Positions 2,691 to 37,600 of a stretch of DNA of 64,000 nucleotides are shown piece after piece (position 1 is the stretch's first letter; each line of letters starts with the position of its first letter). The DNA lies in the NCBI GenBank assembly GCA_965644265.1, contig OZ286474.1:59148001-59212000 (forward strand), read 5' to 3'. Below the pieces are notes generated by a model, which saw only the letters and a program-made list of their open reading frames with translations, did no database searches and had not been told where the DNA came from. The position numbers and the translations under genes are program-made. The DNA is from Glycera tridactyla. Lineage: Eukaryota.

Positions 2691-2982
2691 CTCTATGGCA
2701 ATGTATGATAACCTTCCTGGGCTGTTCACAAGCTGGGGCTCCCATATTCTCCTTGGCGTGTGTATCCGACTGTACAAGCTCGGCCAGAAAGCTGATGTAG
2801 CCGATGGCTAACCGCAGTGTATCCACCTTGGACAGTCTCTTCTCGTAGGGTAGAGTAGGGATGTGGGCTCGTAGCCCCTCGAATGCCTCATTGATGGACT
2901 GCATTCGCTTCCGCTCCCTCTGATTAGCCGCCTGGCGCTGATGAACCTGTTGTGTGCCACATTTCCTTTTCCGCCGCCGAAC
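2691..2982 (-). CDS. Ptf1a: Ptf1a (pancreas transcription factor 1a, class A bHLH), coding exon 2 containing the whole bHLH
   Basis: Translates [70 protein letters not shown]...[11 protein letters not shown]. This matches the Ptf1a bHLH and the Ptf1a-typical KVIICHRG motif. Acceptor ctgcag|GTT at 2982 (phase 0); donor AGAG|gtgggt at 2691 (phase 1). The MMTLLQ start in the ORF track is intronic. Confidence 0.95.
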
Positions 2983-5177
2983 CTGCAGCAATGTCATCAA
3001 TTGAAAATTAATTTATTTGCAATTAGCCATTTTTCTGCATTGTTGATTCGCGAGATGAGCTTGTTGTGAGATTAGGTTTTTATTCAGTGATTCTGGAAGT
3101 GCATTCGGAAACAACCTCAAAGAAGACGTGAAAAAGAGTTTCCTTCTTGATTGAGTCCGGAATATTGAAACTCTACAATTGATTGTCTTGCTACTCATTC
3201 CTTTAATTACGAAATTATCCTGATATTGTTCATAATTCTTTGAATCACGCTGTACAATATATATAGATACTTTGTGATATGGTAATGTGAGCTCCATGTA
3301 AGTTAACAGGTGTCATAATTTATTGATAGAATTAAGACTATTATAATCGACAGAGTAATCATTATTATGGGGTAATTTCATGATGCCCTATGAATTCCCC
3401 ATGAAAGAAAGAGTTCCCAAATGTATGCATACATAGATGCTTATTTTAGAGTAAACGCGCGAAAGTGTTCTAGTCATTCGTGCCCATGATTCACGATCAG
3501 GTTGATTTGGGTTGTAATCGATGCCTTGTGCCAAACCATGGGATTATATATGTCATATGTTTCAAATCTCGGAGCCCAATGCATTTTCCCCCTATAAGCA
3601 TCATATCATGCAGCCTAGACACTGAATATATGAAACCTTATATGGTGTATCTGACTATGTTATTGGCTGACGATTGACACTCAATTCTGCTAGCATGTCT
3701 TCCAAATAAGGTGCGGGATTCGAGACTTTGTGAGAGCCAAAGTGACCCAGACCTAGTGTGCCTACTACACGGTTTATGCATAGTGACAATATTGAGACAA
3801 TCAACGCCCGCCACGTTCAGTTGAGACGACTTCGCATCCAAAATAAGGTAAAGCTTAGTGGGGTAGAATCGATGTGAGAAGTGACCTGATGATATTGCTT
3901 TATTAATTGGCTCAAAATAGTATGAAAGAAGTTGTGCTCACTTCGGACTCCTAGACCAATATCTATCGAGGATAAGACGACTGATGATATAACACTTAGG
4001 GATGGATGGATATGTATATTTTCAGTGTAAAATGGACGCGACCCAAGTAAATTGCCACATCTTCATATTCAATTACAGACATTCAATATGCAAATGTAGT
4101 AACGGATATACACAGCTGGTCAGATATTTGTTACAATTATAAATGGATGAATATATATGTACATCCATTTTTCGGCCAAGCAGCAATTTTGGCTAAGGCA
4201 GTAATTAATTTTCGGCGAAATGATTGGCGCGTCAGCCAGAGGTATTGTGAGATGATTTCAACTTCACATTTACGATCCATTGGTATGTATCAACCGACAC
4301 CTGAGAATCTTTTTCACAGTCTTCTAATATCACAAAACACAGATTTCTCATGACTACATGAACTACATAAGGTGATATAGACCCTGTCTTCATCAGTTTC
4401 AGTCTAACTCCTTTCAGCGAGCTCGGCTGAAGACTTGTTCTTATTCTAAATGAGAAAGGTATTACCTGCTGGCAAAGTCACTAATTGCTGAGGCAAACGC
4501 ATATAATATTGAGAACAATAATATCGGTAAAGATCATGATGATCATAATAATGAAAGTGCAAATAATTAGGACATTAATGATAGTTACAATAATGATGAT
4601 GCTGATTATGATGTTGATTGTGATAATGATAATAATAATAATAATAATAATAATGACACTAATTATGATAATGATCATAATGATAATAAAAGCATAATAA
4701 TAGTAATAGTAATAATGATAATGATGATGCTGATGATCATAATGGAGAATGAGATAGCATTATTGAAGAAGGAGAAGCCCCATATTTGGGGTAACTGTCT
4801 TTAGTTTGACACTGTACTATATGTATTATATTGTACTGTAATCACTGACGAAGTGAAATAAAGTAAAATCAATCAATAATTCAAAAAAAAAAAAAGAAGA
4901 AGGAGGAGGAGGAGGAGAAGGAGGAGGAGGAGGAGGAGGAGAGAAAGAAGGAGGTGGAGAAGAATGAGAAGGAGAGAAAGAAGGAGGTGGAGGGGAAAAA
5001 AGAAATAACAAAGCGAGGGGAAAGGAGACCAATGAAAAACAGATGCCCCAAAAATTACACACAGGCTTATAAGAAATCAAATGTGCTTTTTGTATGATGA
5101 GAACCCCCCTCCATTAAAACTTATAAAAGAACCTGGCGATCTCATTACACCCTGAAAGACTATATGTAATCACCCAC

Positions 5178-17070: not shown

Positions 17071-20000
17071 CATATTTGTACCGATTCCTTGTCTGAGAGA
17101 TGTTGGCGAATGACATTGTTAATGAAATATATTCAGTTCGCAATTATCCACCAGATTCCGCTATCAGGCTGAAGTGTTGACAAGCGCCATCTTGTGATTG
17201 TATCGCATCTGATGATAGTGCTATCCAGGTCATGTTGACCGGCTGGCCTAATCTTGATTTCACGAACCAAATATGATTTACAAATATCCGTATAGAACAA
17301 CTCAGTGGTACGCCTTGGAATCATATATGAACATAGGTTCATATGAAGTCGTATCACATGCAGTCATGTCACCTGCTGAAGAGATACTGGGAATTTCAAT
17401 TTAGGAGAGATTCGGCACTGACATGGCGAGTCACACGTGTTGCCTTTCATCCAGTGTTGACGGATGTTTTATTAATGAATGCGTGTCTGTTTGACTTTCA
17501 TGAATATTAACTCGAACAAAGACGTTATCCCCGCAGCTAGCTGCATCTGAGCATCCGCCCAAGAATGTGAGCATGTCTTCATTTCCTCACGCATTTGGGC
17601 GTCAGATTGATGGATGGAGAGAAATAAGGAAAGGTAGATAGAAGGATAGACGGATATGGTTGGATTGGAATGGATGGATGAATATATAGATAGATGGGTT
17701 GACAGCTTGANNNNNNNNNNNNNNNNNNNNNNNNNNNNNNNNNNNNNNNNNNNNNNNNNNNNNNNNNNNNNNNNNNNNNNNNNNNNNNNNNNNNNNNNNN
17801 NNNNNNNNNNNNNNNNNNNNNNNNNNNNNNNNNNNNNNNNNNNNNNNNNNNNNNNNNNNNNNNNNNNNNNNNNNNNNNNNNNNNNNNNNNNNNNNNNNNN
17901 NNNNNNNNNNNNNNNNNNNNNNNNNNNNNNNNNNNNNNNNNGCAGATGGACGGACCGATGGACGGTGATAGATAGGACTTCCGAGGAGAGAAATCATGTA
18001 TGGCCTCATCTCATCCCCTCTTGATTATCCTATCAACATATCGCATGCAGCGTTGAAACAATGCATAAATGCACAAAAGGCTTGCATGTACATCGTTCAT
18101 CATGTTTTGTGCGTGGGTGTGTATTTTGTTTGTTTGTTTGTTTGTTTGTTTGTGTGTGTGTGTGTGTGTGTATCTGTACAGAAGGAAACAGGCTGTAAGC
18201 ATGTTTTTGTAGGGAGAGCAAAGGAATAGACGAAATCATCAACAGTCATAATGAGGGACTTCGGAATAGTCGTACATTGCCGGGAAGTCTCACATGATAC
18301 AGGTATGAACGATAGAAGTACTGTACATTATGAAAGAATCTAACATGAAACAGGCAAGAAAACCAACTAAAGATCTGAACAAATACAGACAGAGTTGATG
18401 GGCCTGGTCAATTACAGGGTCCTTACTTTCCCTGATGATACCCACATATCTAACTTGAAACAAGCGAAATATGTTCCCACGGAGGGACAGGTGGACAGAT
18501 GGAGGGACAGACAGAGAGATGGACAGACGAAACCTACAGACACTTGCGTCATCACATAGACTCGCCATGGACAGTGCATAGCATGGCTCCTAGAAAGAGG
18601 AGAATATTGGATCTGGATGATGGACATCGATAGATAATGAGGTGTATAGGGAGGATGGCATTTTTTCTGAGAAAAAAATTAAGAGAAAATAGAAACATTC
18701 ATGACATCATCTATACTTGATCAGAGTTGGAAAAGAAACTACTTTACTGGTAAATTGTATAGATGAGTATACGCTGAACGGATTATAGACACTAATAAAT
18801 GAATGAATGACTATCTTTATCGACGTTTAGCAAGTGGTTTGATAAAAATGATATCCGAAAGCACCATTTTGATTATTGAGAGTGGTACCGATGACCGTGA
18901 AAAGAGATCTGGTGAAGGTAATCCCAATTCTGGGCAAGGTTTGTCATGTTTTTTTTCTGTTCTTTTTTTGGACCTAGATGTAGCCGGCTGCCGGATGTCA
19001 AAGATTCGACCTGAATGACCTTGAGACGATCCATCAGGTGGTGACATTCATCGATTAAACTCCTCATTAACATTCCTGCCTGACCTCCGACAATTATTTG
19101 CTTGCACCAATATTGACTCCTGTGAAATGGGCGCTGTCGACTCTTGACATAAGCGTTTTTTTAATCACCGAAAATGCTTCGCGACAGCCTGGACAGTAGG
19201 AGAAGAGCTTGCTCATTTTTCCATTACAAAGGGCCGAATATCTGATTTGAACAGATTTCTGTCAATATTCCAATTCCAAATGTTGGCATTGATAGACTAT
19301 TAGGCAAATATATTGTACCATTAACCTACAGAAGTAGCACCTTAGATGGGTCTTGGGTATGAGGGGCGAGGTCCTACCTAGCATGTGATCAACATAATTC
19401 TTTTGGCGGATCAAAGTCCCTGTTTTCTTCATATACAACATACTCGATACACCTTGCATATGCTAATCGTGTGTTTCCCGGCATTGCTAGATGACACATC
19501 ATTTGCGACCAGCACCAAGATTCCAGAACTACCAGCTTAAGATTCACAGAAAGTGATATATCTGTATCAATAACACCACTGCAAGAATCTAATTAGGAGT
19601 TTGATTCTTGAACATGATTATATTGCGCTCCGATGTGTTCAGCTTGCTAATATGTTTTGATTCCACATGTTCAGCACCCTAGTGATTAATATCGAACATG
19701 CTTGGGACCTTGTTCAGCAGGATAGTATATCGATATTAGACATGCTCAGAAACATGACTACAGTAGCTTATTGCCTTGGTCGGGCAAAGAGTCCAGCTAG
19801 GGTACGTAGTGATCACCCCATTCATTGCTATTCCATTGAAGTGCCTTCTTATCTATTCTATGGTGGCTGGAATGATAGTGAAATACAGTCGAAGGCCACC
19901 TTCGATCGCATCAAAAAGTGACCTTTGTTGGCAGATGGTCTTGATAGAGAGGTAATTTACTGTTAGAGATACTATCAGGTTCGCAACTCATGGTGACCTT

Positions 20001-22562: not shown

Positions 22563-23540
22563 TTACAGACGGACTGCCTGAGGCCTTACATAAGACCTAA
22601 AGGCTGACGAATTCCATCGACCCTTTTGACGAATTTGCTCATCAGAAAACCCTTCACAAACCCAATCACTGCACCTACCTATTCGAAAAGAGTGACTTGA
22701 CAAATGGTGCCTCCTTCCAAGCGTCAGATCGCCTATCTTCTTCAACCAATCGTTCACAAACCGGGGAGATACCGGCTGACCTTCTCTGAGAAACAGTGGG
22801 CCTGGAATCAAAGATCTTACTTTCAAATACCTCTCCATATTTAATACAGGACATGCGAAATCATGAGGAATACTGTTTAGGATGAATTGTCTAGACCCTT
22901 TGGAAAACTTGTAAGACCTTATGGTAAGCTTGAAAGCCTTGGTAACTCCGTAAGTCGTAGCTCGTTGTAAGTCATCCAACTGGATGCAGTGATCATTAGC
23001 ATTTGATTTAGTATATTCCAAAACCCTCAAGCAAGCGGCGTAGGCCCATGAAAACATAGTACATAGCAATATACCGTCATACGAGTACCCTAAAAGATTG
23101 AAGGTGCATTCCAGCATTTTTAACAGAACCGATTTGGAAACTGGAGAGCGAAAATCGCATGATTTCCTGTTCTTCACAATGCCCCCTATCATTCTAGTAA
23201 CCAAGTAATGTTTGCATGAATCTCCCAAATCTCTAACTTTCAAACCATGAGATAAAGCAGAAAGTTTGGATTTTATGGTCGTGGCTTTTAACCCTGTGGA
23301 ATACAGGTATGCTACGTATAGGCATACCGAGGCATGTGAAAAATCGATGCCTTCCGACTTTACAAAAGCAGAAAAGTCATCCCAAACCTTGGAATAGGAC
23401 TTAGCAGTAGACTTCGCAAAAGACTCGTCTACCAACTCTTTCACCAGATTGCCGAGGTCCTGGGATCGTAGGCTTCCGGAATAGCCACCGGGTGTATCGC
23501 TAACCCCGCTTGTCTGCATTGCTCCTGTGAAAATTGGCAT
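22563..23540 (-). CDS. Tyrosine recombinase (phage-integrase family) of the retrotransposon
   Basis: 325 aa with LRVLE (catalytic R), SHSFRIG (H-x-x-R) and GRWNSSAFRSY (W/Y nucleophile region). N-terminal SAM-like region (STAKSY..W..F). Overlaps the end of the RNase H ORF. Confidence 0.93.
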   Translation of the reverse strand: MPIFTGAMQTSGVSDTPGGYSGSLRSQDLGNLVKELVDESFAKSTAKSYSKVWDDFSAFVKSEGIDFSHASVCLYVAYLYSTGLKATTIKSKLSALSHGLKVRDLGDSCKHYLVTRMIGGIVKNRKSCDFRSPVSKSVLLKMLECTFNLLGYSYDGILLCTMFSWAYAACLRVLEYTKSNANDHCIQLDDLQRATTYGVTKAFKLTIRSYKFSKGSRQFILNSIPHDFACPVLNMERYLKVRSLIPGPLFLREGQPVSPRFVNDWLKKIGDLTLGRRHHLSSHSFRIGRCSDWVCEGFSDEQIRQKGRWNSSAFRSYVRPQAVRL

Positions 23541-25222
23541 CTTGAAATCTTATCTGGGATCAAATTGTCCTCTCCTGGGACATGTATGGCCTCAAATTCG
23601 ATATCATTGAGTAGGGAAAATAACATTACATGCCTCATGAGGCGCATGAGGTCCTCATTTCGTGCAGATCGTTTATTGATAACCTCGACGACCGCCATGT
23701 TATCGCAGAAAAACAGCACTTTTCTATGCCTCAGAGCTAGACGAAAAACAACCAGAGCTGTCAGAATAGGGAAAAATTCAAGGTATGCTATATTCTTCTG
23801 ACACCAATCCCCTTGATACTGTAGGTAATACCACAAATTGCGAAAAACCACACCTGCGCCGTTCTTACATGCGTCAGAATGAATGTGCTCCGGTGCCTGC
23901 CGGCGCAACGTGATATCTTTGAGAAAAGAGTAACCGTTATACTCTGAAAGGAAAGATTGCCACATAATCAGATCCTTTTCTAACTGAAGGGAAAAACAAA
24001 CTAAATGAGAGGTGTCAGTGAGGCCTAAGGTTGCGTCTATGAGGCCTCTGGTGAAGGATTTCCCTGCTGGTATAAGGGAGGTACACCAACTCAATTTACC
24101 TATAAGTGATCTGAGCACTCCGAACAAACATTGTTTAGCATGGAGGATGTCCGACACTTGCTTCAAATATTTCTCAAGCTTGTCAGCCGGCACTCTGGCG
24201 AAACCCTGCCGTACGTCTATCTCAATTCCCAGGAATGTAATTTTCTGTTTCGGATTTTCCGTTTTACGAGGACACAACGGTATTCCAGCTTTCAAGCAAA
24301 AATCCTGGAAAGCTGTTAAATCCTGTAGGCATTTATCGTAGCCATCTGCTACGAAGCAGAAGTCGTCTAGCATGTGTGAGGCGTGTGTAATGCCCAATTT
24401 GTTTTGACAGACCCACTGAAGCGCCGTAGCAAATCTCTCGAAGATCCTGCAGGAGGACCTCCCTCCCATTGCTAAGCATCTGTTTATGTAAAATTCATGT
24501 CCCAGCCTAAGTCCCATGAGGTGGAACTGATCAGGTTTGATGGGAATAATTCTAAAAGCGGATTTAATATCCGTCTTACTAAGATATGCCGTTTTGCCTA
24601 TCGATATCACAAAACCTATGACTGTTTGAACCGAAGCGTACTTCACAGAAGCAGCGGAATCTGGGATATGATAGTTCACAGACAATGAGTTGTACGGCGC
24701 GGAGAGGTTATGTATGAGGCGAAACTTTCCTACTTCGCGCTTCGGGACTATCGAAAGAGGGGATACTTGGATATTATTAAACGGCGGTTCTGCAAAAGGA
24801 CCTACAATCCTTCCTAGTTCTATTTCCTCCGCTATTAGAATCTTGGTTTCCTTAAAATGTTCCTGAACTGAAGGAGAATTCCTGCCCCTATAGGCAGGTG
24901 AAATTCCTTGAAAACCTATGCAAAAACCGTTACTGAAACCATCGATTAGGTAATCAACCTCACCTGCATCATAGCTGTACAACTCATGTCTGAGAAATTG
25001 GTGATTTACTGGTGTCGCCACCTCCTGAAGCCTTTTTCTTATTGCCGAGCTGAGGTGATCCTCCGCTATTTGACCTGCACATATACAAAGGGTGAGAACC
25101 AGCGCAAGTTGGACACGTGTGCTTAAAGGAACAGCTGGGGAACAGACATCTTTTACCCTGAGCATGGTAAAAATTGCAATATCCCTTTTTAATACGTGGT
25201 CCTGACTGCTTCCCTGTATCAT
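23441..25222 (-). CDS. Reverse transcriptase - RNase H (DIRS type)
   Basis: 593 aa with SPLSIVPK, KFRLIHNLS, KTDIKSAFR, CLAMG and MLDDF (RT), and SDAC, IAYLEFFP, FCDNMAVV and HVPGEDNLIPDKISR (RNase H). No methyltransferase domain follows. Confidence 0.95.
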   Translation of the reverse strand: MIQGSSQDHVLKRDIAIFTMLRVKDVCSPAVPLSTRVQLALVLTLCICAGQIAEDHLSSAIRKRLQEVATPVNHQFLRHELYSYDAGEVDYLIDGFSNGFCIGFQGISPAYRGRNSPSVQEHFKETKILIAEEIELGRIVGPFAEPPFNNIQVSPLSIVPKREVGKFRLIHNLSAPYNSLSVNYHIPDSAASVKYASVQTVIGFVISIGKTAYLSKTDIKSAFRIIPIKPDQFHLMGLRLGHEFYINRCLAMGGRSSCRIFERFATALQWVCQNKLGITHASHMLDDFCFVADGYDKCLQDLTAFQDFCLKAGIPLCPRKTENPKQKITFLGIEIDVRQGFARVPADKLEKYLKQVSDILHAKQCLFGVLRSLIGKLSWCTSLIPAGKSFTRGLIDATLGLTDTSHLVCFSLQLEKDLIMWQSFLSEYNGYSFLKDITLRRQAPEHIHSDACKNGAGVVFRNLWYYLQYQGDWCQKNIAYLEFFPILTALVVFRLALRHRKVLFFCDNMAVVEVINKRSARNEDLMRLMRHVMLFSLLNDIEFEAIHVPGEDNLIPDKISRCQFSQEQCRQAGLAIHPVAIPEAYDPRTSAIW

Positions 25223-26942
25223 TCTTGCCTGGGTTGAAACTGCCTGCTTTTAAAGCCTTCTGATGAAGCACGAGGTGAAAAGTTGACCAGGGAAACGGCT
25301 TCACCATTTGGGAACGGAGTACTCTGAAATTCCTGTCATAGAACATGAAATTACCACCGTTATTGTCCAATTCCCTTATCTCATGAACATAAATGAGTAG
25401 GTCGCAACCTTCCCTCGCTCGTTGTTGAGCATTTTTGAAGGGGTGAGCGTTGTAGATAGCCTGAAAGACTAGAAATGCCTGTTCCCACTCTGAAATAGAT
25501 CTAATGGACTTTTTCTTTTTAGAGAGAACGAACTCCCCAGATTTCCCATCTACTTTATAGTGCTTATTCAATAGTTCTGTCGGCTGTAAAAGCTCTTCTA
25601 ACTCAATATATTTGTCCTGCCATATTGATATTCGGGTGTCTAAGTCCACATTGAACCCTATTGGTAGACCCGCCGAAATTATATTTCGAGGGCTTGGATC
25701 ACACAATATATCCGATTCATTTATCGATCTGAAATCAGGAAGACTACGGAAAGGAGACAATGCCGTACATTCATCAGCACTATCTCCTGTATCTCTGATC
25801 CCTTGTAGTCTGGCACCGTCTGCTAAGCGAGCCGTGCCATGATCGTCATGGCTGGCTACACCCCGCCGTAACAAATTCAACCTGTGGTACATGGACATGT
25901 CAATTTCATCATCGCCTGCCGTGACGGTAAGCGGAGGCACACTATGCGGGTCAGAACTGACTGCCGCGAACACATTGTTTGGGTTGAAATTGACACGGCC
26001 ACCCTCACCACGGGTTGAAGACAAACGCCCCGCATGTAAACTATTGTTGTTGTGACCTAAGCCTAACCGTTCGTCTCTGTCATTGAAGTTAAGTCTCGTT
26101 GTCTGTCCGTCCGCCGTCCCTGCCGTCTGTCTTGTTTGATTCGAACTGCCTGTAAAATTAATACTGTGGCACACTGGCCTGCTACGGCCACTGTACTGTC
26201 TTTCATCTTTATCCGAACTACCTAAGACTGTGTTCGACATGAAGAGTAAACGGTCGTTACCTTGCAAAGAATGTCCGCCGTTACTTTGTGAGGCAGCTTC
26301 TGTCGGTCGCCCTCCGATGCCAGTCCCAGTACCGAGACCGTCGATTCTGGCCTGCATGCTCAGCATGATGTTGGACAAGTCCGAAATCTGCCGTGTTGCC
26401 ATTGCTATGGTTGATCTGAAGTCTGACCTGAGTTCGTTTATCGCAGCCAGCCTGGTTGTATCGCCGTGCTCCGACACGTGGTCGTTACTTGCAGAGCCTG
26501 TCGCTCCTAGGGTACTTCCGCTATTCCGCATGCGCAAATCACACGGCACCGGAGAAGGCGACCCACCAATGCCTCCTCCTACGTGCCTATTTCAAATATT
26601 GCAAGCATTGTCTGATGAACGTTGTAACCTATCCAAACGTTGGCCCAGACCACCGTTTCGGGGTTCACAGACTGAACCCTCAACGTTCATAGGGTGACAA
26701 TTGCCAACTGAATTGGGAGGCGGTTGACCACACGGGATTTGACTTCCAAATCCGAAAGCACCCACCTGAGCAGGGCCAGACGCCCTCGAATCCGTGCCGT
26801 TCAGCAAATCCGAAAATGGATCACGACCGCTCCCATTACATGTCAGCGGCCTAAAATCCTCGTCACCCGATGGTCCTCCCAGCGCTGCCGGCTTCCTTTT
26901 CGCGCCGTTACCATTGTCTTCCAAAATGCTCCTTTTCGCCAT
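24984..26942 (-). CDS. Gag-like ORF (~652 codons) with one in-frame TGA at 26592-26594
   Basis: Track ORFs 26592-26942 and 24984-26549 are in the same frame, separated by a single TGA (..ACNI*NRHVGGGIGGSPSPV..). The C-terminus has the DIRS gag motifs EWEQAFLVF and YDRNFR and a Cys/His finger, CNFYH..C..PSCSFKHTCPTCAGSHPLYMC. Confidence 0.85.
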
Positions 26943-27094
26943 CTGTAATCATGATTTTTATCCCAGAACAGTATTTTGTCACAATATGTCACTGAATGTC
27001 CGTCACAACAACCATAGAAAATTATAAATTAGCTGTTAACCTCTAACAACAACAAAGAAAAACAACAACAATAACGTATCCCACTTTCAACTGT

Positions 27095-27847
27095 CTAGAA
27101 CAACGGATTGAGCCCTCGAACCACTCTGCCGAGTCCTGGTACACAGTCCAGCACTGCCTGCCTGAGTTCAAGACGATATTTCCTTGAATAACGTGAGTTT
27201 GGTTTTGGATGAATACCATCCCTACTCCACCTTAGAATGGTTCGAGGAGCAATGTCCAACAATGATCCAAACCCTCTGGTATCATGATAAACCAAACCCG
27301 GCATATGCAGACAGCAGTTTTCCACTTGTGCATTAAATACACGAGCCCTAGGCCTGAAGGCCACAGGCGAAACGAGCCTGTCCAGGCAAGACATGATGTC
27401 AATCATTTTGATGTCATGCTGCGTACGCAGGTTTACAGCTATCTCACATAAGTCTACTGCCAAAGTCCGTGGATCATTGTTGGGTTTCACCAAATCATTG
27501 GACCCTAAGTCCAAAACCACTACATCAGGGACTAATTCGCTAGCGAAGCCTAACTCCTCCAAAATCCCGTGATTGTCTGGATAGTCCTTCAGAAAAGTGC
27601 AAGACCTCAAGTGAACGGCCTGGAATGTATCTGAAAGATTCAGTAGCCTAGCGTACACCTCTGCTCTAGTCATGTTCCCCACCTCTATCTCATGTCCAAA
27701 CCTCCCTTCCTGGATGATAGTATCCAAGTCGTCCTTCTGGTGTTGAACAAAAGAATGTCCCAAAATTAGTCCTACCGGTTTCCGACCTAACCATTGTTCT
27801 ATTGGAACATACGGCGACTTCGCCTGCCAATGCGCCATGCCTATCAT
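27095..27847 (-). CDS. SGNH/GDSL hydrolase (esterase-like), 250 aa from the first ATG
   Basis: Block I GHSF, block III LDLGSND and block V DGIH are present, so the catalytic S, D and H are intact. Confidence 0.85.
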   Translation of the reverse strand: MIGMAHWQAKSPYVPIEQWLGRKPVGLILGHSFVQHQKDDLDTIIQEGRFGHEIEVGNMTRAEVYARLLNLSDTFQAVHLRSCTFLKDYPDNHGILEELGFASELVPDVVVLDLGSNDLVKPNNDPRTLAVDLCEIAVNLRTQHDIKMIDIMSCLDRLVSPVAFRPRARVFNAQVENCCLHMPGLVYHDTRGFGSLLDIAPRTILRWSRDGIHPKPNSRYSRKYRLELRQAVLDCVPGLGRVVRGLNPLF

Positions 27848-27899
27848 TGAAATGGGAGACCCGAAACAGAACAAAGGCTACCTTAGAACGGTCAGTTGA

Positions 27900-29510: not shown

Positions 29511-30790
29511 ACTACCACTGAAATGCATCTCCACTGATTCTAGACTTTCAATATGATAGAGAGTGGCAGTAGGGCAAAGATTGATATCTGGATTAGTGTC
29601 TGATGAATTTGATATAAGCGGTTGAGGAGTTCTTAATAAACCTGCCATTGGCGCAGCTGCTTCACAGTTGTACTATTAAACCTCACATGTGTATGAACAA
29701 TTATGGGATAACGACGCCGGTCACGTGACCACCGGTATGGACACACAAACTGACCAGCACGCTGGACACACAACTGACCACGTGCGTCATTCATGAGTTT
29801 ACACTGGACAATTATTTACTTTTTCACCTCACTGATTGACCTGTAATGAAGCTTGATGAGGAGGGGAATTAGAGAGGGTTGTGAAGCTGATGTATGCATG
29901 CGGCCAACTTTGCTGGGTGTCAGGGTGGAAGCAAGGTAAGACCTCCTACAGAGGCAGATGTTGACCAAGGCGCACGAAAATGAATGAAAAAAAAACACCA
30001 TGGAGAAATCAAACCTCACCCAACTCACATTTTATTCTACATTATCCCCCCCCCCCGTATTGTCTGTCTGACTGCCTGTCCAGTTGTCTGCCTGCCTGCC
30101 TGCCTGTCGCCCCATCCTCAATCCTTCTCGCACTTTCCGTCATTTGTGTTTTGTCTTCCCCATACTCACAATCCTCCTCCCCTTCCCTGGTTCTACCCCC
30201 CCCCCATTGTACCCATCCTCCGTGCTGTAACCTGCATCCTGCATCCTCCATCCTCCATCCTCCGGGGAAAGTGAAAAATACGGTCCCCTGTTTTCGAGCA
30301 CCTGTCGAATGTAAGAAAACGGTCCTATAGTTACTATTTATTGATAAATATGTCAGCAATGTGTTTCTATCAATATAATTCCTATTAGGTGACGACGAAG
30401 TGTAGCATCTTTCCATAAAATTAATATTTTCTGTCTTTCCAACTGATTTAAAAGCCGTATCAAAAGGGGAAAAATCCCCCGGGGATAGCCTGTCATGACA
30501 AGAGTGTAGCATCATTTGTTTCTACTTTGATTTCCAACAAAAACGAACTCAACCTCCAAAACAATCAATATTCAACAATAAAATCAACTAATTTCGCTAA
30601 TCAAATACCTGATTTGACTTGTCTGGTCGTTTTAGTGACTAAAAATCGCTAATAAATGTGTCACAAGCACCTGCTTCGTGGTGGCTGCCATTTTTGTTGT
30701 GAGCGTATTAATACGACAGTTGCCTGTGATGAGGCCAGAAGCGCTCCACCAGTGCAGTCCCACAGCAGGTACTACTTCATATGTTTTAAC

Positions 30791-30877
30791 ATGTCAGCTT
30801 CTTGCTCCATGAGTGAATCCCTCCATCCATGCAGTCCCACTGCCATTGAATCATCAAGGAAATGCAGCAAAAAACAG
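30791..30877 (+). CDS. Merlin cargo gene, shared first coding exon (inferred)
   Basis: ATG 30791, MSASCSMSESLHPCSPTAIESSRKCSKKQ, then the strong donor CAG|gtaagt (phase 0). Confidence 0.55.
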
Positions 30878-30970
30878 GTAAGTGAGCCAGCTGTGTGCTC
30901 TCTAGCTGAGAAGGTTGGAAATGCTTGCCGCCAAGTTCTGAAAGTGAAATCACCAGATCTTCCCCAACAG

Positions 30971-31004
30971 AATACTGGTAAACTGCAGGATTCCACATCT
31001 GAAG
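30971..31004 (+). CDS. Merlin cargo gene, 34-nt cassette exon of isoform B (inferred)
   Basis: Acceptor tcttccccaacag|, donor GAAG|gtgagt; phase 0 in, phase 1 out. Confidence 0.5.
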
Positions 31005-31359
31005 GTGAGTTAATGTTATTTTAAGTGTTATTGGAAGTGATATATTAAAACATAGATTAAAATAGGGTAAAGACTTGAAATAGAAACTTAATAAATAATG
31101 CTCAATTGGAGTTTTTTTGGGGTTGAGGTTTTATTCATCACTCACTGTGTTGTTGGTACTGTTGATAGCATCTCAATGACATGTTTCAGTCACATTTTGT
31201 ATGCCAATTAATGTTATTTAATCAGCTCTAATTAAGTAAATCACTCATGAAATACATTATTTCAACAAGATTGAAGTCCTCCCATGGATGAATAACATTG
31301 GAAAATATGCAGGAAAATCTCAAATTAGACAGTTACCAGTAATTTCTTTTCTTTTCCAG

Positions 31360-31779
31360 ATAAAAAAGGAGGAACCGTCCCACTCCACTAGTCAATTTCA
31401 AGCCTACGTCAACACAGGTATGCCTACCTCTGGTGAAAAGAAACGCGATTTGTGGGCTGACATCCAAAGTATAGTTGGCAAAGGGAAGGACATGCCGAAC
31501 TGCATCAGCATCTTATTCTTCAAAAAATACCTCAAGCACTGGGACAGGGTGATGCTTGCAGCATTCACGTATTGGAATGGTTTAAATCCTGAAATAATGA
31601 TGGAGTGGGTGCGCCTAAATCAACAGTGCCATGACGTTTCTGGAGAGAAAGAGCTGGAGAGTCTCATCGATGCATACAACAAGGGGAAACACTACAACAT
31701 GTATTCATTTTCCATGATAAACCAGCGCTGGGAATATTTTGATGGCCGAGTACGCATTCCCTACCATAACAGAAACTGA
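31360..31779 (+). CDS. Merlin cargo isoform A terminal exon; helical domain resembling primase PriL-CTD/PriX
   Basis: Strong acceptor ttcttttcttttccag|ATA (phase 0). Encodes MPNCISILFFKKYLKHWDRVMLAAFTYWNGLNPEIMMEW..YNMYSFSMINQRWEYFDG. The domain assignment is by eye only. Confidence 0.65.
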   Translation: MKKEEPSHSTSQFQAYVNTGMPTSGEKKRDLWADIQSIVGKGKDMPNCISILFFKKYLKHWDRVMLAAFTYWNGLNPEIMMEWVRLNQQCHDVSGEKELESLIDAYNKGKHYNMYSFSMINQRWEYFDGRVRIPYHNRN

Positions 31780-31808
31780 AGTAAGTTCTTTTTTTCTCTT
31801 TTTTTCAG

Positions 31809-32392
31809 ATCCCGACATGTCTCGGATGCTATCTGAGGTGTTCTCAGTACCGATCGTGAGGACCCACTATAATGCCAGCTTTCCCGGGGCCAAAATCCAT
31901 CATGCCATAACAGAGGACAGGAAAATGTATCGGCCATTAACTCTTCAGACAGGCCTGGGACAGTGCTGCTACTCGAACACATGCCGGCGAGGATTTGCAA
32001 ATATGCCATTGAATTTGTTGAATTGTGAGCCACAGCGCTACGTAGATGGGATGTCGGCTGGAATGAATTATGAAGGCTGTTGCCAGAGCTGTGGGAACCC
32101 CATTCCTAGCCATGCTTCTTATCGATTTCTCAGTGTGGATGTTGTTCAGTGGGTCAGAAATTACCTAAAAACGGACGGTGATTGGCGGCAGGTGCACGGC
32201 GAGGGAGAAGTAACACAAATGTTCTACTTGTATATTGCAAAAAAACAACAAAGGATCAAGAGCAAACCAATCAGGAAGAACTTGATAAATGTATTGATAA
32301 TCCACCCAATGCACAACAGTTACCGGTTCCACCACCAGACATTCACATATCCCCCCACAACTCCAATGTGTATTCTTTCCTTGAACATATAA
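31809..32392 (+). CDS. Merlin cargo isoform B terminal exon; Cys-rich protein of unknown function
   Basis: Acceptor tttttctctttttttcag| in phase 1 restores the long frame DPDMSRMLSEV..CCYSNTC..CCQSC.. A likely -1 continuation follows from the A7 run at 32239-32245. Confidence 0.5.
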
Positions 32393-33671
32393 TGAAAGAG
32401 AGTGAACATGAACTTGATTTAGACATTATTGGCAAAACTAATTTCATTTGCAAATGCACGCCAAGTGAGGATAAGTCATCTGAGCCATCAACAGAACCTG
32501 TATATGATGTAAAAACAGCNNNNNNNNNNNNNNNNNNNNNNNNNNNNNNNNNNNNNNNNNNNNNNNNNNNNNNNNNNNNNNNNNNNNNNNNNNNNNNNNN
32601 NNNNNNNNNNNNNNNNNNNNNNNNNNNNNNNNNNNNNNNNNNNNNNNNNNNNNNNNNNNNNNNNNNNNNNNNNNNNNNNNNNNNNNNNNNNNNNNNNNNN
32701 NNNNNNNNNNNNNNNNNNNNNNNNNNNNNNNNNNNNNNNNNNNNNNNNNNNNNNNNNNNNNNNNNNNNNNNNNNNNNNNNNNNNNTAAGAGTGAGTGAGT
32801 GAGTGGGTGAGTGGGTGGGTGAGTGAGTGGGTGATTGAGTATGAGTNNNNNNNNNNNNNNNNNNNNNNNNNNNNNNNNNNNNNNNNNNNNNNNNNNNNNN
32901 NNNNNNNNNNNNNNNNNNNNNNNNNNNNNNNNNNNNNNNNNNNNNNNNNNNNNNNNNNNNNNNNNNNNNNNNNNNNNNNNNNNNNNNNNNNNNNNNNNNN
33001 NNNNNNNNNNNNNNNNNNNNNNNNNNNNNNNNNNNNNNNNNNNNNNNNNNNNNNNNNNNNNNNNNNNNNNNNNNNNNNNNNNNNNNNNNNNNNNNNNNNN
33101 NNNNNNNNNNNNNNNNNNNNNNNNNNNNNNNNNNNNNNNNNNNNNNNNNNNNNNNNNNNNNNNNNNNNNNNNNNNNNNNNGAGCGAGTGAGCGAGGGTGC
33201 AATGATAATATCATTCTCATTCAGTTTTGCAACGTCCATCATGACCGGGTTTACTTCACTTGAATTAATGGGGAACAAAAATATTGGGTGGGTAGATGCC
33301 ATTGGATGGAGTCATATATTTATAGAGGAGAATTATTCAGTTCGGCAAAGTCATAAATGGCCGGGTTTACTTAACAATTTATCTTCACCAGCATATCTTC
33401 CCATGTGCGATTGTGGTTGGGTGGGTGGTGAATGGGGGAGGGATGGCGATCTAGGGCTTCGTTAATGCAATGTGCTTAGGCATCGGGTTTACTTAGTGTT
33501 TTTTCTGTACATTTCAACCAATGAAATCAACTGGAATAAAATCAATGACATCACTTACCTAATCAATGGAAACATCTCTTTTTGCAGTTTGTTGTTCTTC
33601 TGTAATCTTTACTTTCAGCTTCCTTCTTTGGGTTACGGTATAAAAATAAATGTATCTATTGCACGAGCATC

Positions 33672-34622
33672 CTAATGGAAACGGGCCTGCGGCATAGCCT
33701 GACGCATTGCCACGTCCACCTGCTCATTGCCGCAAGGGTAGTAATGGGCCATTATGTTGACCAGCTTGGCGAAAATGTCCTCGCGTTTCGCGTTTCACCT
33801 GAACGTGACTTCATCCAAGTATGCTGGGAGCCTCTCTGTTCTCACACCATGCATCGACTTGAAAATGCACTTCAAGTTTCCCCAACAACCCTCGATGGAC
33901 TGCGTGTGCGTACCATCTTCAGGGTCAACGTAGTTGTCCGAGTGGTTGACAGTTTGGTGAACGTACTGGTTTTCGTGTTGGCCCAAGCGAGCATAGGCTG
34001 CCCACTGGTCAGAGTATATTGTCGTCCTTGGAACAATGTGCCGAACGATGTGGCTGACGAGCTCCTCCCTTGTGCGGTTAGGAACTATGGCAAGAACCAC
34101 CTTCTTCGTAGTTCGGGAGAGCATGCCAAACACCCACGGAGAATCAGCCATCGCTCTACCCCTGTTGTATTTACGCTTCCCACGCCAAAGGGACTCGTCG
34201 ATTTCAACGATTTCGCCAGGTCCACCGAGTTGGACTGGGTGATCCAGCATCCACCGAGACATACAGTCACGAAACAGATTGTACCAGTCCATGATGGACT
34301 TCTCACACATGTGACTCCCAATCATTTTCGCAGCATCCACAATTTGAACTTGTAGAGAGAATAAATAAAGTACCATGAGAAGTGTCTGTAAATCAAGTTT
34401 TTGCTTCTCGAAGAAGCTGCCAGTACGTATGGATTTTCTGCCTCTGCACTGTGGGCACTTCCAGGTAAACCCATCTGCTTGCCTTTGCTCATACTTCTGC
34501 TGGCGCATCCACACATTACAAACATCACATACCTGTCCTTCTCTTAATAGGCCATTCTCTCGCATGAAAACTATAGAGTTTTCCTTCGATGCAGTAATAA
34601 TCCCGATTTGGAAGATATCCAT
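33672..34622 (-). pseudogene. Merlin DDE transposase (316 codons) with one premature TGA at 33795-33797
   Basis: N-terminal C-x2-C..C-x2-C finger, then SIRTGSFFE, VEIDES, KYNRGR, WVFG, IYSDQWAAY, VNHSDNYVDP..HTQSIEGCW and YLDE. The frame continues past the TGA (FR*NAKREDIFAKLVNIMAHYYP..) to TAG at 33672. Confidence 0.92.
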
Positions 34623-37600
34623 TGCGAAAGTGCCACGCCCACTTATACCTCGATCCTCGACCGCGTGTGAGTATTTTCGAATTTTCGCGCCCTTAGCAAC
34701 CTCGGCGGTCACGTGACCGGCCGCTATAGCATCGTTTCATAGCATCACCGCAAAAATCATCTCAGAGACGTTTCTAACTCATTATTTTGGTATAAATCGT
34801 TTTAAAACGTTTATATAACGTTAATTGCTCGCTAGGGTGCAACTAGTAACGTGTATTTATATCGTAAATCGAAAACGAAATGCGAACTATATCGTACCGA
34901 CTTCTCGCGCAAGATCACGTTTTTAGCGAGGTAGTGATTCGGTTAGCTATTTCAACATTGTTTTTGCAACAAACGCTTCAAAATAGTCTTTATACCCCGA
35001 ACTTTTCTCCATTTTGTCTAATTAGATCAGAAAAATCATCGAGGAATGTTTTTATAACGTTTCTACACAGATATTCAATGATTTCTCAGGGAACTCTTTG
35101 AGATCCGCGCAAGCGCACGTATTTAGAACCGGAAGTGAACAGGTAAGCAATGGCGGCCACAACAACGAGAGATGCGAGTTGCGATCCCGTGACAGTTTAC
35201 ATGAAATGAGGTAAGATGACAGGTTTTCAACATCTTTCGTGCAGTTTTCCATGTTAGTTTCAATATTCACTCTCTCATGATGTTCTTATATGATCGTGCC
35301 AACGCTGATTTCGTTTGAAATTCGTAGATACAATTGTTGCTACACTTTGACATCTCTCACTTTATAGACTACCAAACCGGGGGATTTTTCCCCCAGATAC
35401 GGCTTCTAAATCAGTATTCCTATCGTTAATATTGAAAGATGCTACACTTTGCCGTGCCCTATAGAAACAGAATTAATTATTACAAATAAATAACACCAAG
35501 AAATGATTTTTTGGATTGTTTTTATAGGTGCTGTCAACCTCCGAAAAAAGGGGACCGTATTTTTCACTTTCCCCCATCCTCCACCTTCCATCATGCATCA
35601 TGCATCAGGCATCTATCNNNNNNNNNNNNNNNNNNNNNNNNNNNNNNNNNNNNNNNNNNNNNNNNNNNNNNNNNNNNNNNNNNNNNNNNNNNNNNNNNNN
35701 NNNNNNNNNNNNNNNNNNNNNNNNNNNNNNNNNNNNNNNNNNNNNNNNNNNNNNNNNNNNNNNNNNNNNNNNNNNNNNNNNNNNNNNNNNNNNNNNNNNN
35801 NNNNNNNNNNNNNNNNNNNNNNNNNNNNNNNNNNNNNNNNNNNNNNNNNNNNNNNNNNNNNNNNNNNNNGAAGGTAGCAAAACGCCAAATACAACAACAT
35901 CTGAAACAAGGGCAATAGAACAGAAGGAGAAGCAGCAGCAGCGGACACACATCAGTAGCCATCCCGTGACCCATACTGGGGTCATCGAGCTATTTCAAGG
36001 TGCTACTTAGGACTGGTGACTGACCAGCAGTTGTCTACGCACCCCATCATTATCAGCACCCTGGTATCGACCACCTGGCATTCAACTTGTGTGCACATCA
36101 CTTCCGTGTTTCAAAGTCATGCAATGACTCTGATGAGTGCCTCATATCCTCACTGGGTACATCATTATCTGGGACCTCTAACATGATTTTTGTGTATTGA
36201 ACATTGAGTACATCCAAACTGGATTCAGAATTATTCTATTGTACCAATGGCTAGGCAATGAGTAGGGTTCCTATTGAGATAGGTGAAGAAGTTCGATATG
36301 GTCGACCATCCAATACCGGGCACATTCTCATGTTTATTTCAGTCCATGCTTCTTGAACAAGGGGCGCCTCGGTTGAGAGGAGATTGAGTGGAACTCTGCT
36401 TTGCACATTTTGAATGGGTACTTTGGATAGAGGAGTGGCATTGGTGGGAATTGTGGAGTGCTTAGCTTATGCAGTCACTTTTGAGATGTTAGTGGTATAA
36501 TCTTCATAGGGTTTTAAAAGGCTCAAGCATCGTCTTTCACGGAATATCAAGGTGAAGTCTGATAAATCTGTCAAAGATATCGCACAGTAAATCATAGCAT
36601 TAATACTTTCACCACATATCAGGCTACCACTCACATGATATCTTGATTATCAGGATATCATGTATGTATGAACTTTGTGTTGCAATGTCACAGATTGGTT
36701 TTCGAACCTTTTACAGCCTATTCAATGATTAGTAAGGGTTACTGTACTCATACAAGGTCACATATCTGGGCCTCATGTGACATTACGCCTAGTTAAGTTG
36801 CATCCTTATGGAGCCACCTATAAGGGTCCTTTCTCTGAACAGGCTCCTATTGTGTTTCATGTATGTTTGAAACAGGTTCAATCATGGTAGGATGAAAATG
36901 TTATCTTCAAAATCACTCATCGACTAAATTAGCAAATATTGAAAATCGGAATATTTGAGTTGACTTGATCCTGACTTGGGCCACTTGATGCCTTTATTTA
37001 GTGCCAGATCACGACCGTGGCATTTCGCTGGCGTGGCCTGACTCTGTCTGCAGGGATAATATCATGCTGAACGCCCGCCTCCTCCCCTTGCTCATCCACT
37101 TCATCCTCCTGCTCTCCCTACTCTCTGTCTCTGTCTCTCTGTCTCTGTCTCTCTCTTTCCGTCTCTCCATCTCCGTCTCTGTCTCCGCCTCCGCCCCCGC
37201 GTCTGCCTGCCTGCCTGTCTTTCTGTCTTTCTATCTTCTTTCTCCATCCATCCATCCATTCATCCATCCATTCATCCATCAATCTATTTATCCTAACCGT
37301 GATCAACCCTAAAAGAATTTCCAAAGGCCACACAAAAGTTGGAACGCCCATTTATCGAATCACATTGCGACCATCCTATTCTACAGGGAAAAACAAACTC
37401 ATTAAAGAATCAAAACCCGGAGTTAAAATTAGGGGTATCATTGTTGAACCAGTCTATGAGAGCAGGATGCTTTGTCGTGCCCCACGTAGCCCGAGGACAA
37501 GATAATGGGGGGGGGGGGGCAGAAAGTGAAAGAAGCTGATAGTTCATACACACCTCCTACTACATAACGATGACTGGGTGGAAACGGATATATGTTACAA

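What the first reader, a model, noticed from the sequence alone, without database searches (positions are those of the whole stretch)
30264..35574. Merlin transposon with a convergent, spliced accessory gene
Matching TIRs and TSD show the plus-strand cargo (about 30791-32520+) moved with the element. Established: described Merlin elements generally encode only the transposase. Two convergent units driven from the ends recall MuDR (mudrA/mudrB). The cargo has long open frames and strong splice sites, so it is not obviously decayed host DNA. Novelty is unverified without a database search.
Basis: partly seen in the sequence, partly recalled or inferred. Interest (0 to 1): 0.78.

Follow-up and report, generated by a model that had tools for sequence, protein, structure and literature searches.

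The report
Merlin transposon with two extra genes
This is a recently inserted Merlin-type jumping gene that carries, besides its transposase, a small conserved protein gene that also sits next to Merlin transposases in a dozen other genome and metagenome lineages (named ones are molluscs), a companion I found in no paper on this superfamily.

Summary
The element at 30264-35574 is real. It has 33-nt inverted ends starting GGGG, an 8-bp target duplication (CATCCTCC) and a minus-strand IS1595/Merlin DDE transposase. That transposase has one in-frame TGA where relatives have Trp.

The plus-strand "cargo" is not one spliced gene. It is two adjacent genes.

Gene A (31420-31779, 119 aa, intact) belongs to an unnamed family of small basic proteins with 211 cluster representatives and no Pfam, PHROG or PDB sequence match. 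Its stop codon is the family's natural end. AlphaFold gives a very confident fold (pLDDT 95.7) with no PDB analogue. The only fold matches are uncharacterized ORFs of CRESS-DNA viruses.

In 12 other lineages a Merlin transposase lies 0.05-4.6 kb from the A homologue. This held for all 7 lineages with long contigs. In one of them A lies inside mapped GGG-type inverted ends. Gene order and orientation vary. A and transposase distances co-vary (Mantel r 0.80, p 2e-4).

Gene B (31817-32392, continuing in another frame into the gap) has a homologue directly after A in one other contig. Here it is broken by a likely 1-nt frameshift and then lost in the assembly gap.

Best reading: a multi-gene Merlin lineage whose small protein is a transposition accessory factor. 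The function is inferred, not shown.

The parts
30256..30263 (.). left target-site duplication CATCCTCC
   Evidence: read; identical to 35575-35582; lies in CATCC-type low-complexity DNA
30264..30296 (+). left terminal inverted repeat, starts 5'-GGGG
   Evidence: I1: 33 nt, 97% complementary to 35542-35574
30399..30513 (+). left subterminal region with two copies of AGTGTAGCATC (30399-30409, 30503-30513), about 135 and 239 nt from the end; candidate protein-binding sites
   Evidence: four copies, placed symmetrically at both ends in inverted orientation; I2, I3, I15, I17; further subterminal inverted repeats I4, I6
30656..31024 (+).
   Evidence: no Pfam match; no tblastn match in any fetched locus
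31420..31779 (+). gene A: intact 119-aa small basic protein of a conserved unnamed family (an alternative ATG at 31288 would give 163 aa); TGA at 31777-31779 is the natural stop
   Evidence: 211 representatives at E<=1e-3, best 42% identity; alignments; pLDDT 95.7
31817..32392 (+). gene B, first frame (191 codons from ATG 31817 to TAA 32390-32392); conserved C-terminal block RKNxxNVLxxHPxHNxYRFxHxTFxY
   Evidence: 29% identity over about 190 aa, E 2e-13 / 2e-16, to the ORF directly after the A homologue in L027
32341..32519 (+). gene B continuation in another frame (frame C), open into the gap; implies a 1-nt frameshift near the C6 run 32351-32356
   Evidence: collinear weak match (E 1e-3, includes KTxFxCKC) to the continuation of the L027 ORF
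32520..33180 (.). two assembly gaps (32520-32785, 32847-33180) around a 61-nt (GAGT)n island; content unknown and not inferred
33219..33497 (.). three tandem copies of a unit of about 118 nt between cargo and transposase
   Evidence: D3
33672..34622 (-). Merlin/IS1595 DDE transposase, 316 codons, N-terminal CxxC...CxxC, DDE triad present; in-frame TGA at 33795-33797 where relatives have Trp
   Evidence: PF12762, E 3e-26; 131 relatives, best 44% identity; alignment: the stop falls on the W of the RW motif
35336..35448 (-). right subterminal copies of AGTGTAGCATC (35336-35346 with 1 mismatch, 35438-35448), about 228 and 126 nt from the end
35542..35574 (-). right terminal inverted repeat
   Evidence: I1
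35575..35582 (.). right target-site duplication CATCCTCC
   Evidence: read

Best explanation
A Merlin-superfamily cut-and-paste DNA transposon of about 5.3 kb, including about 600 unread bases, inserted fairly recently into low-complexity DNA of an unidentified metazoan genome. It belongs to a multi-gene kind of Merlin that I did not find described in any paper I could search. Besides the DDE transposase (minus strand) it carries two plus-strand genes. Gene A is a 119-aa basic, mostly helical protein of a widespread but unnamed family that is a recurrent companion of Merlin transposases. Gene B is a larger, fast-evolving protein found next to A in a few lineages. Shown: the element's anatomy; A's family, confident fold and repeated physical linkage to Merlin transposases, once inside mapped inverted ends; co-variation of A and transposase divergence. 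Inferred: A is a transposition accessory factor, most likely a DNA- or transposase-binding subunit acting at the element's ends. The four symmetric subterminal AGTGTAGCATC motifs are candidate sites. This would be analogous in role to the second protein of PIF/Harbinger elements. This particular copy is probably no longer autonomous: the transposase has a nonsense codon that cuts off 40 residues, B is frameshifted, and A is intact.
For: TIR, TSD and GG ends. Transposase: PF12762 E 3e-26; DDE triad and Trp-to-stop. A family: 211 representatives at E<=1e-3, 38 at E<=1e-10, all short (about 110-180 aa) and ending where the window ORF ends. AlphaFold pLDDT 95.7, pTM 0.86 from a 71-sequence alignment, which implies a conserved, constrained fold. 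Family median pI 9.4, net charge +5. Linkage: a Merlin transposase lies 0.05-4.6 kb from the A homologue in L006/7, L011 (Mytilus coruscus), L012 (Batillaria attramentaria), L013, L014/15, L020, L023, L028, L033, L041, L042 and L043-46. That covers 7 of 7 lineages whose contig is at least 28 kb. In L014 the left end (GGGGATGACTTCC...) and an imperfect inverted copy about 6.4 kb away enclose a B-like ORF, A and the transposase. A-versus-transposase pairwise distances: Pearson 0.80, Spearman 0.54, Mantel p 2e-4. B: homologue directly after A in L027 and a distant B-like ORF directly before A in L015/L014. Symmetric subterminal motifs.
Against: No function was tested; DNA binding is inferred only from charge, size and analogy. 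The fold has no PDB analogue, so structure gives no functional assignment. The window's A has Met at a position that is Trp in 99% of the family, and differs at several other conserved positions. The closest transposase relative found (P0001, 44% identity) sits in a 2.1-kb element present in 4 near-identical copies that carries no A. A is therefore not needed in cis by every Merlin. Twenty-one of the 25 metagenome-scan contigs with an A homologue (1.1-7.5 kb) show no transposase on the contig, as do L008-L010 (2.0-2.3 kb). Order and orientation of A relative to the transposase are not conserved. No second copy exists in the window, and the host genome was not available, so mobility of this exact three-gene unit rests on one TIR/TSD pair in low-complexity DNA. 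The Mantel result can partly reflect shared host phylogeny and a few close pairs.
Confidence: 0.72

Rival explanations
1. One spliced accessory gene (exons at about 30791-30877, 30906-31004, 31360-31780 and 31809-32520+) is transcribed from the left end, convergent with the transposase, as in MuDR's mudrA/mudrB.
For: GT...AG pairs with good consensus exist at the stated places. The frames are open. A and B are only 37 nt apart on one strand, so a common transcript is possible.
Against: The A frame ends with an in-frame TGA before the proposed donor, and family members end at the same place. The 28-nt 'intron' is very short for a metazoan intron (own knowledge). With the first 28-nt 'intron' removed, 'exon 2' has an in-frame stop (read). 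B has its own ATG and its own homologue, which also follows a stop-terminated A in L027. Homologues of A were called as stand-alone ORFs of 110-180 aa. The transposase is not MULE-type.
Confidence: 0.07
2. A is a real Merlin gene, but it is a regulator or host-interaction factor rather than a transposition cofactor. Examples are a transposition inhibitor or an anti-silencing protein like VANC of VANDAL elements.
For: An A-less Merlin with 4 near-identical copies exists, so the transposase may suffice for movement. The order and orientation of A are free. The fold is unrelated to known DNA-binding folds in the PDB. The only fold matches are in CRESS-DNA viruses, where small accessory proteins often target the host (own knowledge).
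Against: Nothing tested here separates this reading from a cofactor role. The basic charge and the co-variation with the transposase fit both.
Confidence: 0.2
3. The cargo is captured host DNA (transduplication, as in Pack-MULEs), or another element nested inside a Merlin, with no role for the element.
For: This copy is unusually long for a Merlin. It contains a microsatellite, tandem repeats and gaps. B is broken. The scaffold could join parts of different copies across the gaps.
Against: The same small protein lies next to Merlin transposases in 12 other lineages, including molluscs and marine metagenomes, and inside mapped ends in L014. The A-B pair recurs in L027. There is no Pfam domain of any host gene or other transposon, and no internal TIR pair around A-B.
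Confidence: 0.03

Closest known systems
Merlin superfamily of eukaryotic DNA transposons (Feschotte 2004; survey in PMC8101967), related to bacterial IS1016/IS1595
   Same: DDE_Tnp_IS1595 transposase with N-terminal CxxC pairs; TIRs starting 5'-GG; 8-bp TSD (defining features as quoted).
   Different: The related bacterial IS1595 family is stated to carry a single transposase gene (PMC8101967), and five literature searches found no Merlin with a second gene. This element carries two more genes and is 5.3 kb. Gene A recurs with Merlin transposases in 12 other lineages.
PIF/Harbinger elements (transposase plus a Myb/SANT-like DNA-binding protein)
   Same: Two-protein DNA transposon whose second, small protein is needed with the transposase (own knowledge). 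Variable relative orientation of the two genes. This is the best functional analogy for A.
   Different: A has no Myb/SANT or any Pfam domain. The transposase superfamily is different. A's role is untested.
MuDR of maize (mudrA / mudrB, convergent)
   Same: In this one copy, two transcription units point inward from the two ends.
   Different: The transposase is not MULE-type. The convergent layout is not conserved in relatives. There is no sequence relation.
Uncharacterized small ORFs of CRESS-DNA viruses (BFVD models A0A345MQ97, A0A345MY62, A0A7D4X0G2, A0A8A4XAY6)
   Same: The only fold matches of A: TM 0.56-0.69, Foldseek probability 1.00, E 5e-4 to 9e-3, similar size of 116-178 aa.
   Different: 15-22% identity. 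Those proteins have no known function. No sequence-level link was shown. No A homologue was confirmed in IMG/VR viral contigs with the one peptide pattern used.

Membership tests
Merlin superfamily | Transposase with the DDE_Tnp_IS1595 catalytic domain and an intact D-D-E triad | tested here: met
   PF12762 E 3e-26, 92.6 bits against a cut-off of 27. D, D and E fall in the EIDES, YSDQW and QSIEG blocks that align with relatives. One nonsense codon lies downstream of the triad.
Merlin superfamily | 8- or 9-bp target-site duplication | tested here: met
   8-bp CATCCTCC on both sides. Caveat: the flanks are low-complexity.
Merlin superfamily | Terminal inverted repeats of 24-462 bp with terminal 5'-GG-3' | tested here: met
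   33-nt TIR starting GGGG; criterion as quoted from PMC8101967.
Merlin superfamily | Single gene (transposase only), as stated for the related IS1595 family and usual for described Merlins | tested here: not met
   Two further genes with homologues elsewhere. This is a usual trait rather than a defining one, so membership stands.
MuDR/MULE two-gene elements | MURA-type (MULE) transposase, long TIRs, 9-bp TSD | tested here: not met
   The transposase is IS1595-type. TIR is 33 nt and TSD 8 bp.
PIF/Harbinger two-gene elements | PIF/IS5-type DDE transposase plus a Myb/SANT-like second protein, 3-bp TSD | tested here: not met
   No such domains in any ORF; TSD is 8 bp.
Gene A protein family (unnamed) | Protein of about 110-180 aa with the LWxDIQDIIG...WP...R...F..VNGLNP...EW...YEYLDG pattern, ending a few residues after the last block | tested here: met
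   phmmer E down to 2.8e-22; alignments A1 and A2. The window protein keeps G20, P26, R43, F49, N53, G54, L55, P57, W63 and G109 but has M for the 99%-conserved W25.
Gene A protein family (unnamed) | Located within a few kb of a Merlin transposase, inside the element's ends | tested here: met
   In the window A lies 1.9 kb (including gaps) from the transposase and inside the TIRs. The same linkage holds in 12 other lineages, and A lies inside mapped ends in L014.
Functional accessory factor of transposition | Binds element ends or the transposase and changes transposition frequency | not testable with these tools
   Needs binding and transposition assays.

The most novel reading that the evidence does not exclude
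Gene A defines a previously unrecognized, ancient multi-component branch of Merlin transposons. Its product would be an obligatory end-binding or transposase-loading subunit with a fold absent from the PDB and shared only with orphan ORFs of CRESS-DNA viruses, pointing to gene exchange between small eukaryotic DNA viruses and cut-and-paste transposons.
Probability: 0.25. Interest if true: 0.8.

Novelty: new variant of a known kind. Interest (0 to 1): 0.6.

Why it matters
Merlin is treated as one of the simplest eukaryotic transposon superfamilies, with one gene inherited from bacterial IS1016/IS1595-type insertion sequences.

A conserved second protein that co-diverges with the transposase across molluscs, marine-plankton metagenomes and other samples whose organisms I could not name would change that picture. 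Part of the superfamily would then be a two- or three-component system, like PIF/Harbinger, CACTA or MuDR.

It would also give an unnamed protein family (211 or more sequence clusters, no Pfam entry) a genomic context and a testable role. The very confident predicted fold has no solved counterpart and has look-alikes only among orphan CRESS-DNA virus ORFs. That makes a small, tractable target for structural and biochemical work.

For genome annotation, stand-alone 'hypothetical proteins' such as KAK7490672.1 (Batillaria) would be recognized as transposon genes.

Tried and rejected
- **Word-index searches, A and B:** both blank. For A this was a sensitivity failure, because the full HMMER scan found 211 relatives. 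B was never given a full scan, since only one job was allowed.
- **Family and structure-sequence libraries:** Pfam on all pieces, on 71 family members and on neighbouring ORFs gave nothing. So did PHROGs and a PDB sequence profile. One member's weak DNA_primase_lrg hit (E 0.015), and weak BFVD matches to a viral PriL and a PriCT-1 domain (TM about 0.4), were judged too weak to use.
- **Foldseek against the PDB for A:** no match (best E 1.6).
- **AlphaFold of B from a 3-sequence alignment:** pLDDT 39.6, so no fold search was run on it.
- **Is A a detached piece of the transposase?** Rejected by hhalign, probability 0.25%.
- **Closest transposase relatives (P0001, P0002):** checked for cargo; none.
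- **Second copy in the window:** none.
- **IMG/VR viral contigs:** no confirmed A homologue with the one pattern used.
- **The search for related loci:** three calls failed because the alignment had no conserved stretch.
- **dN/dS between close copies:** 0-1 differences per gene. The loci were fetched by exact protein identity, so the comparison is biased and uninformative.
- **52-nt inverted repeat in L013 (8183-8234 / 19104-19154):** not accepted as element ends, because the termini do not match and do not start with GG.
- **T. cruzi hit P0151:** a translated tandem repeat, dismissed.
- **Left out on purpose:** I did not read or infer the gap letters.
Full report
**Observation**

The ends are 33-nt inverted repeats, 97% complementary, with the first 26 nt perfect, and they start 5'-GGGG (I1). 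They are flanked by identical 8-mers, CATCCTCC, at 30256-30263 and 35575-35582.

The flanks are CATCC-type low-complexity DNA (D4, 87). An 8-mer match is therefore less improbable here than in unique DNA. Even so, the TIRs, the TSD length and the transposase type agree with each other.

Inside each end lie further inverted subterminal repeats (I2, I3, I4, I6). They include four copies of AGTGTAGCATC, placed symmetrically about 130 and 235 nt from each end in inverted orientation. No second copy of the element exists in the window.

**Gaps, tested first**

The plus-strand frame C is open up to the last letter before the gap at 32520. The 61 letters between the two gaps (32786-32846) are a (GAGT)n microsatellite with a stop in each of the three plus frames (read).

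After the second gap come three tandem units of about 118 nt (D3) and then the 3' end of the transposase gene. Continuity and frame across 32520-33180 cannot be established. I did not infer or look up the unread letters. The matching TSDs are the only evidence that the two halves belong to one insertion.

**Transposase**

The minus-strand ORF runs from ATG 34622 to TAG 33672-33674. It matches PF12762 (DDE_Tnp_IS1595) at E 3e-26 and has 131 relatives in the word search. The best is only 44% identical. Named relatives come from Mytilus, Rhopilema, Rotaria, Hydra and an aphid.

The CxxC...CxxC N-terminus and the D, D and E blocks align with relatives. There is one in-frame TGA at 33795-33797. It falls exactly on the Trp of the conserved RW motif of four of the relatives aligned. 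It is therefore a nonsense change that removes the last 40 residues.

All tested features that define Merlin are met: domain, 8-bp TSD and GG-initiated TIR (criteria as quoted from PMC8101967).

**Gene A**

The exhaustive HMMER scan found 211 cluster representatives at E<=1e-3, of which 38 are at E<=1e-10 and the best is 42% identical.

Almost all are short proteins of about 110-180 aa. They start 10-25 residues before a conserved LWxDIQDIIG block and end a few residues after a YEYLDG block. The window ORF from ATG 31420 to TGA 31777-31779 (119 aa) matches this from end to end. The TGA is thus the family's normal stop, not a break.

None of the 71 members tested has a Pfam domain. The five proteins tested against PHROGs gave no match, and the family profile has no PDB sequence relative. 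The few named members are 'hypothetical' or 'unnamed' proteins of Batillaria attramentaria and Mytilus coruscus.

AlphaFold with the 71-sequence alignment gives pLDDT 95.7 and pTM 0.86: five helices followed by a beta hairpin. Foldseek finds no PDB analogue (best E 1.6). In BFVD it finds uncharacterized ORFs of CRESS-DNA viruses (TM 0.56-0.69, probability 1.00, E 5e-4 to 9e-3).

The family is basic, with median pI 9.4 and net charge +5. It is unrelated to the transposase itself (hhalign probability 0.25%). The window's A keeps most conserved residues but has Met at the 99%-conserved Trp25.

**Linkage to Merlin**

I fetched the genomic surroundings of A homologues and searched them with Merlin transposases. 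In every lineage whose contig is at least 28 kb, a Merlin transposase lies 0.05-4.6 kb from A. These are L006/7, L011 (Mytilus coruscus), L012 (Batillaria), L013, L014/15, L041 and L042, so 7 of 7. In L013, L014 and L042 the neighbouring called gene carries PF12762.

The same holds in marine-metagenome contigs L043-46 and in 4 of 25 short JGI metagenome contigs: L020, L023, L028 and L033. The other 21 JGI contigs are 1.1-7.5 kb and show no transposase on the contig.

In L014 the copy boundary is defined by comparison with L015. It starts GGGGATGACTTCC, and an imperfect inverted copy lies about 6.4 kb away. Between them are a B-like ORF, A and the transposase. The 8-mer TTACCTTC flanks the left end in L015 and the right end in L014.

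| Layout | Lineages |
|---|---|
| A upstream of the transposase, same strand | 6 |
| Transposase upstream of A, same strand | 2 |
| Divergent | 4 |
| Convergent | the window only |

Pairwise divergence of A correlates with that of its neighbouring transposase: Pearson 0.80, Spearman 0.54, Mantel p 2e-4 over 13 pairs of genes. Shared host ancestry may contribute to this.

The closest transposase relative (P0001, 44% identity) sits in a 2.1-kb element with four 99.6%-identical copies and no A. A is therefore not carried by all Merlins.

**Gene B**

The next frame, from ATG 31817 (37 nt after A's stop) to TAA 32390-32392, had no Pfam hit and no word-search hit. It does match, at 29% identity over about 190 residues (E 2e-13 by tblastn, 2e-16 pairwise), the ORF that directly follows the A homologue in metagenome contig L027. 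A strongly conserved block, RKNxxNVLxxHPxHNxYRFxHxTFxY, lies near the end of the window frame.

In L027 that ORF continues for more than 460 codons. Its next stretch matches the window's frame C weakly but collinearly (E 1e-3, including KTxFxCKC). The window's B therefore most likely continues in frame C after a 1-nt shift near the C6 run at 32351-32356, and then runs into the gap. Whether the shift is a mutation or a homopolymer read error cannot be told.

A distant B-like ORF (sharing the CC...C...F motif and the C-terminal block) lies directly upstream of A in L015/L014. Other A-carrying Merlins have no B. AlphaFold on B failed (pLDDT 39.6), so no fold search was made.

The proposed 28-nt intron at 31781-31808 starts after A's stop codon, so it cannot fuse A to B. 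Removing the proposed 28-nt intron at 30878-30905 puts a stop into 'exon 2' (read). The frame 30656-31021 is open only if that stretch is retained.

From the donor at 31004/31005, the strong acceptor at 31359/31360 is out of frame with A. Only a weaker acceptor at 31339/31340 is in frame. The upstream frame has no homologue in any fetched locus.

I searched each piece separately by reference. The upstream exons remain unverified, and transcript data are needed.

**Mechanism**

Shown:
- A is a conserved, structurally constrained small basic protein.
- A lies next to Merlin transposases in 12 other lineages and inside the inverted ends in the two elements where ends could be mapped.
- Its divergence tracks that of the neighbouring transposase.

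Inferred: A is an accessory factor of transposition. Most likely it binds the element's ends or subterminal repeats, or the transposase, as the second protein of PIF/Harbinger does.

A regulatory or host-directed role, such as inhibition or anti-silencing, is a live rival. It fits the existence of A-less active-looking Merlins and the free gene order. Capture of host DNA or a nested foreign element is very unlikely given the recurrence across lineages.

This copy is probably non-autonomous. It has a nonsense codon in the transposase and a broken B, yet it is young, with 97% TIRs and an intact TSD.

**Comparison and novelty**

It is a member of Merlin by every tested defining feature. It differs from described Merlins in gene content. 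The widest survey in the library (PMC8101967) states that the related bacterial IS1595 family has a single transposase gene. It mentions none of the ORF-related terms I searched for. Five literature searches found no report of a second Merlin gene.

Repbase and Dfam entries could not be consulted, so an informal earlier notice cannot be excluded. I rate it a new variant of a known kind.

**Limits**

- The host genome and other copies of this family were not available. The window's own proteins are absent from the protein collection.
- B never received an exhaustive search.
- No expression or functional data exist.
- No contig looked human, and nothing in this work touched toxins or animal viruses.

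Noticed in passing
window 22566-27877, minus strand: A retroelement lies 2.4 kb upstream of the Merlin. It has a reverse-transcriptase ORF (RVT_1, E 3e-11), an ORF that looks like a tyrosine recombinase by eye (no Pfam hit), and an ORF with a weak GDSL/SGNH-hydrolase match (E 4e-7, below the Pfam cut-off). From my own knowledge this combination recalls Ngaro/DIRS-type elements.
   Followed up: partly
window 2677-3012, minus strand: An exon encodes a basic helix-loop-helix domain (PF00010, E 2.5e-22) that looks PTF1A-like by eye. It indicates a metazoan host. The species was not identified.
   Followed up: partly
L013 8353-9917; L014 10838-12428; L006 5600-7100 and 8600-9800; window 33219-33497: A-carrying Merlin elements in several genomes contain long internal arrays of tandem or inverted repeats between their genes. 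The window copy has three units of about 118 nt. Their role is unknown.
   Followed up: no
protein P0125 (241 aa, Logan assembly): One family member carries two tandem A domains in a single ORF.
   Followed up: no
protein P0151 (Trypanosoma cruzi, 873 aa): This hit at E 1e-11, with 11 matched stretches, is a translated tandem repeat that matches only the FTxW..NPE..W segment of A. I judged it spurious.
   Followed up: yes
L014 15246-15290 and L015 7470-7490: The 8-mer TTACCTTC flanks the left end of the element in L015 and the right end in L014, while L014's own left flank differs. This suggests a chimeric assembly or recombination between two copies.
   Followed up: partly
L018 2280-3956: In this metagenome contig the A homologue at the contig edge is followed by LTR-retroelement protease and reverse-transcriptase pieces. 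This is probably a nested insertion.
   Followed up: partly
window, whole: Tetranucleotide and trinucleotide microsatellites are very dense across the window (GGAT, GAGT, CTGT, GACT, CAAT families), and there are eight assembly gaps of 149-334 N.
   Followed up: no
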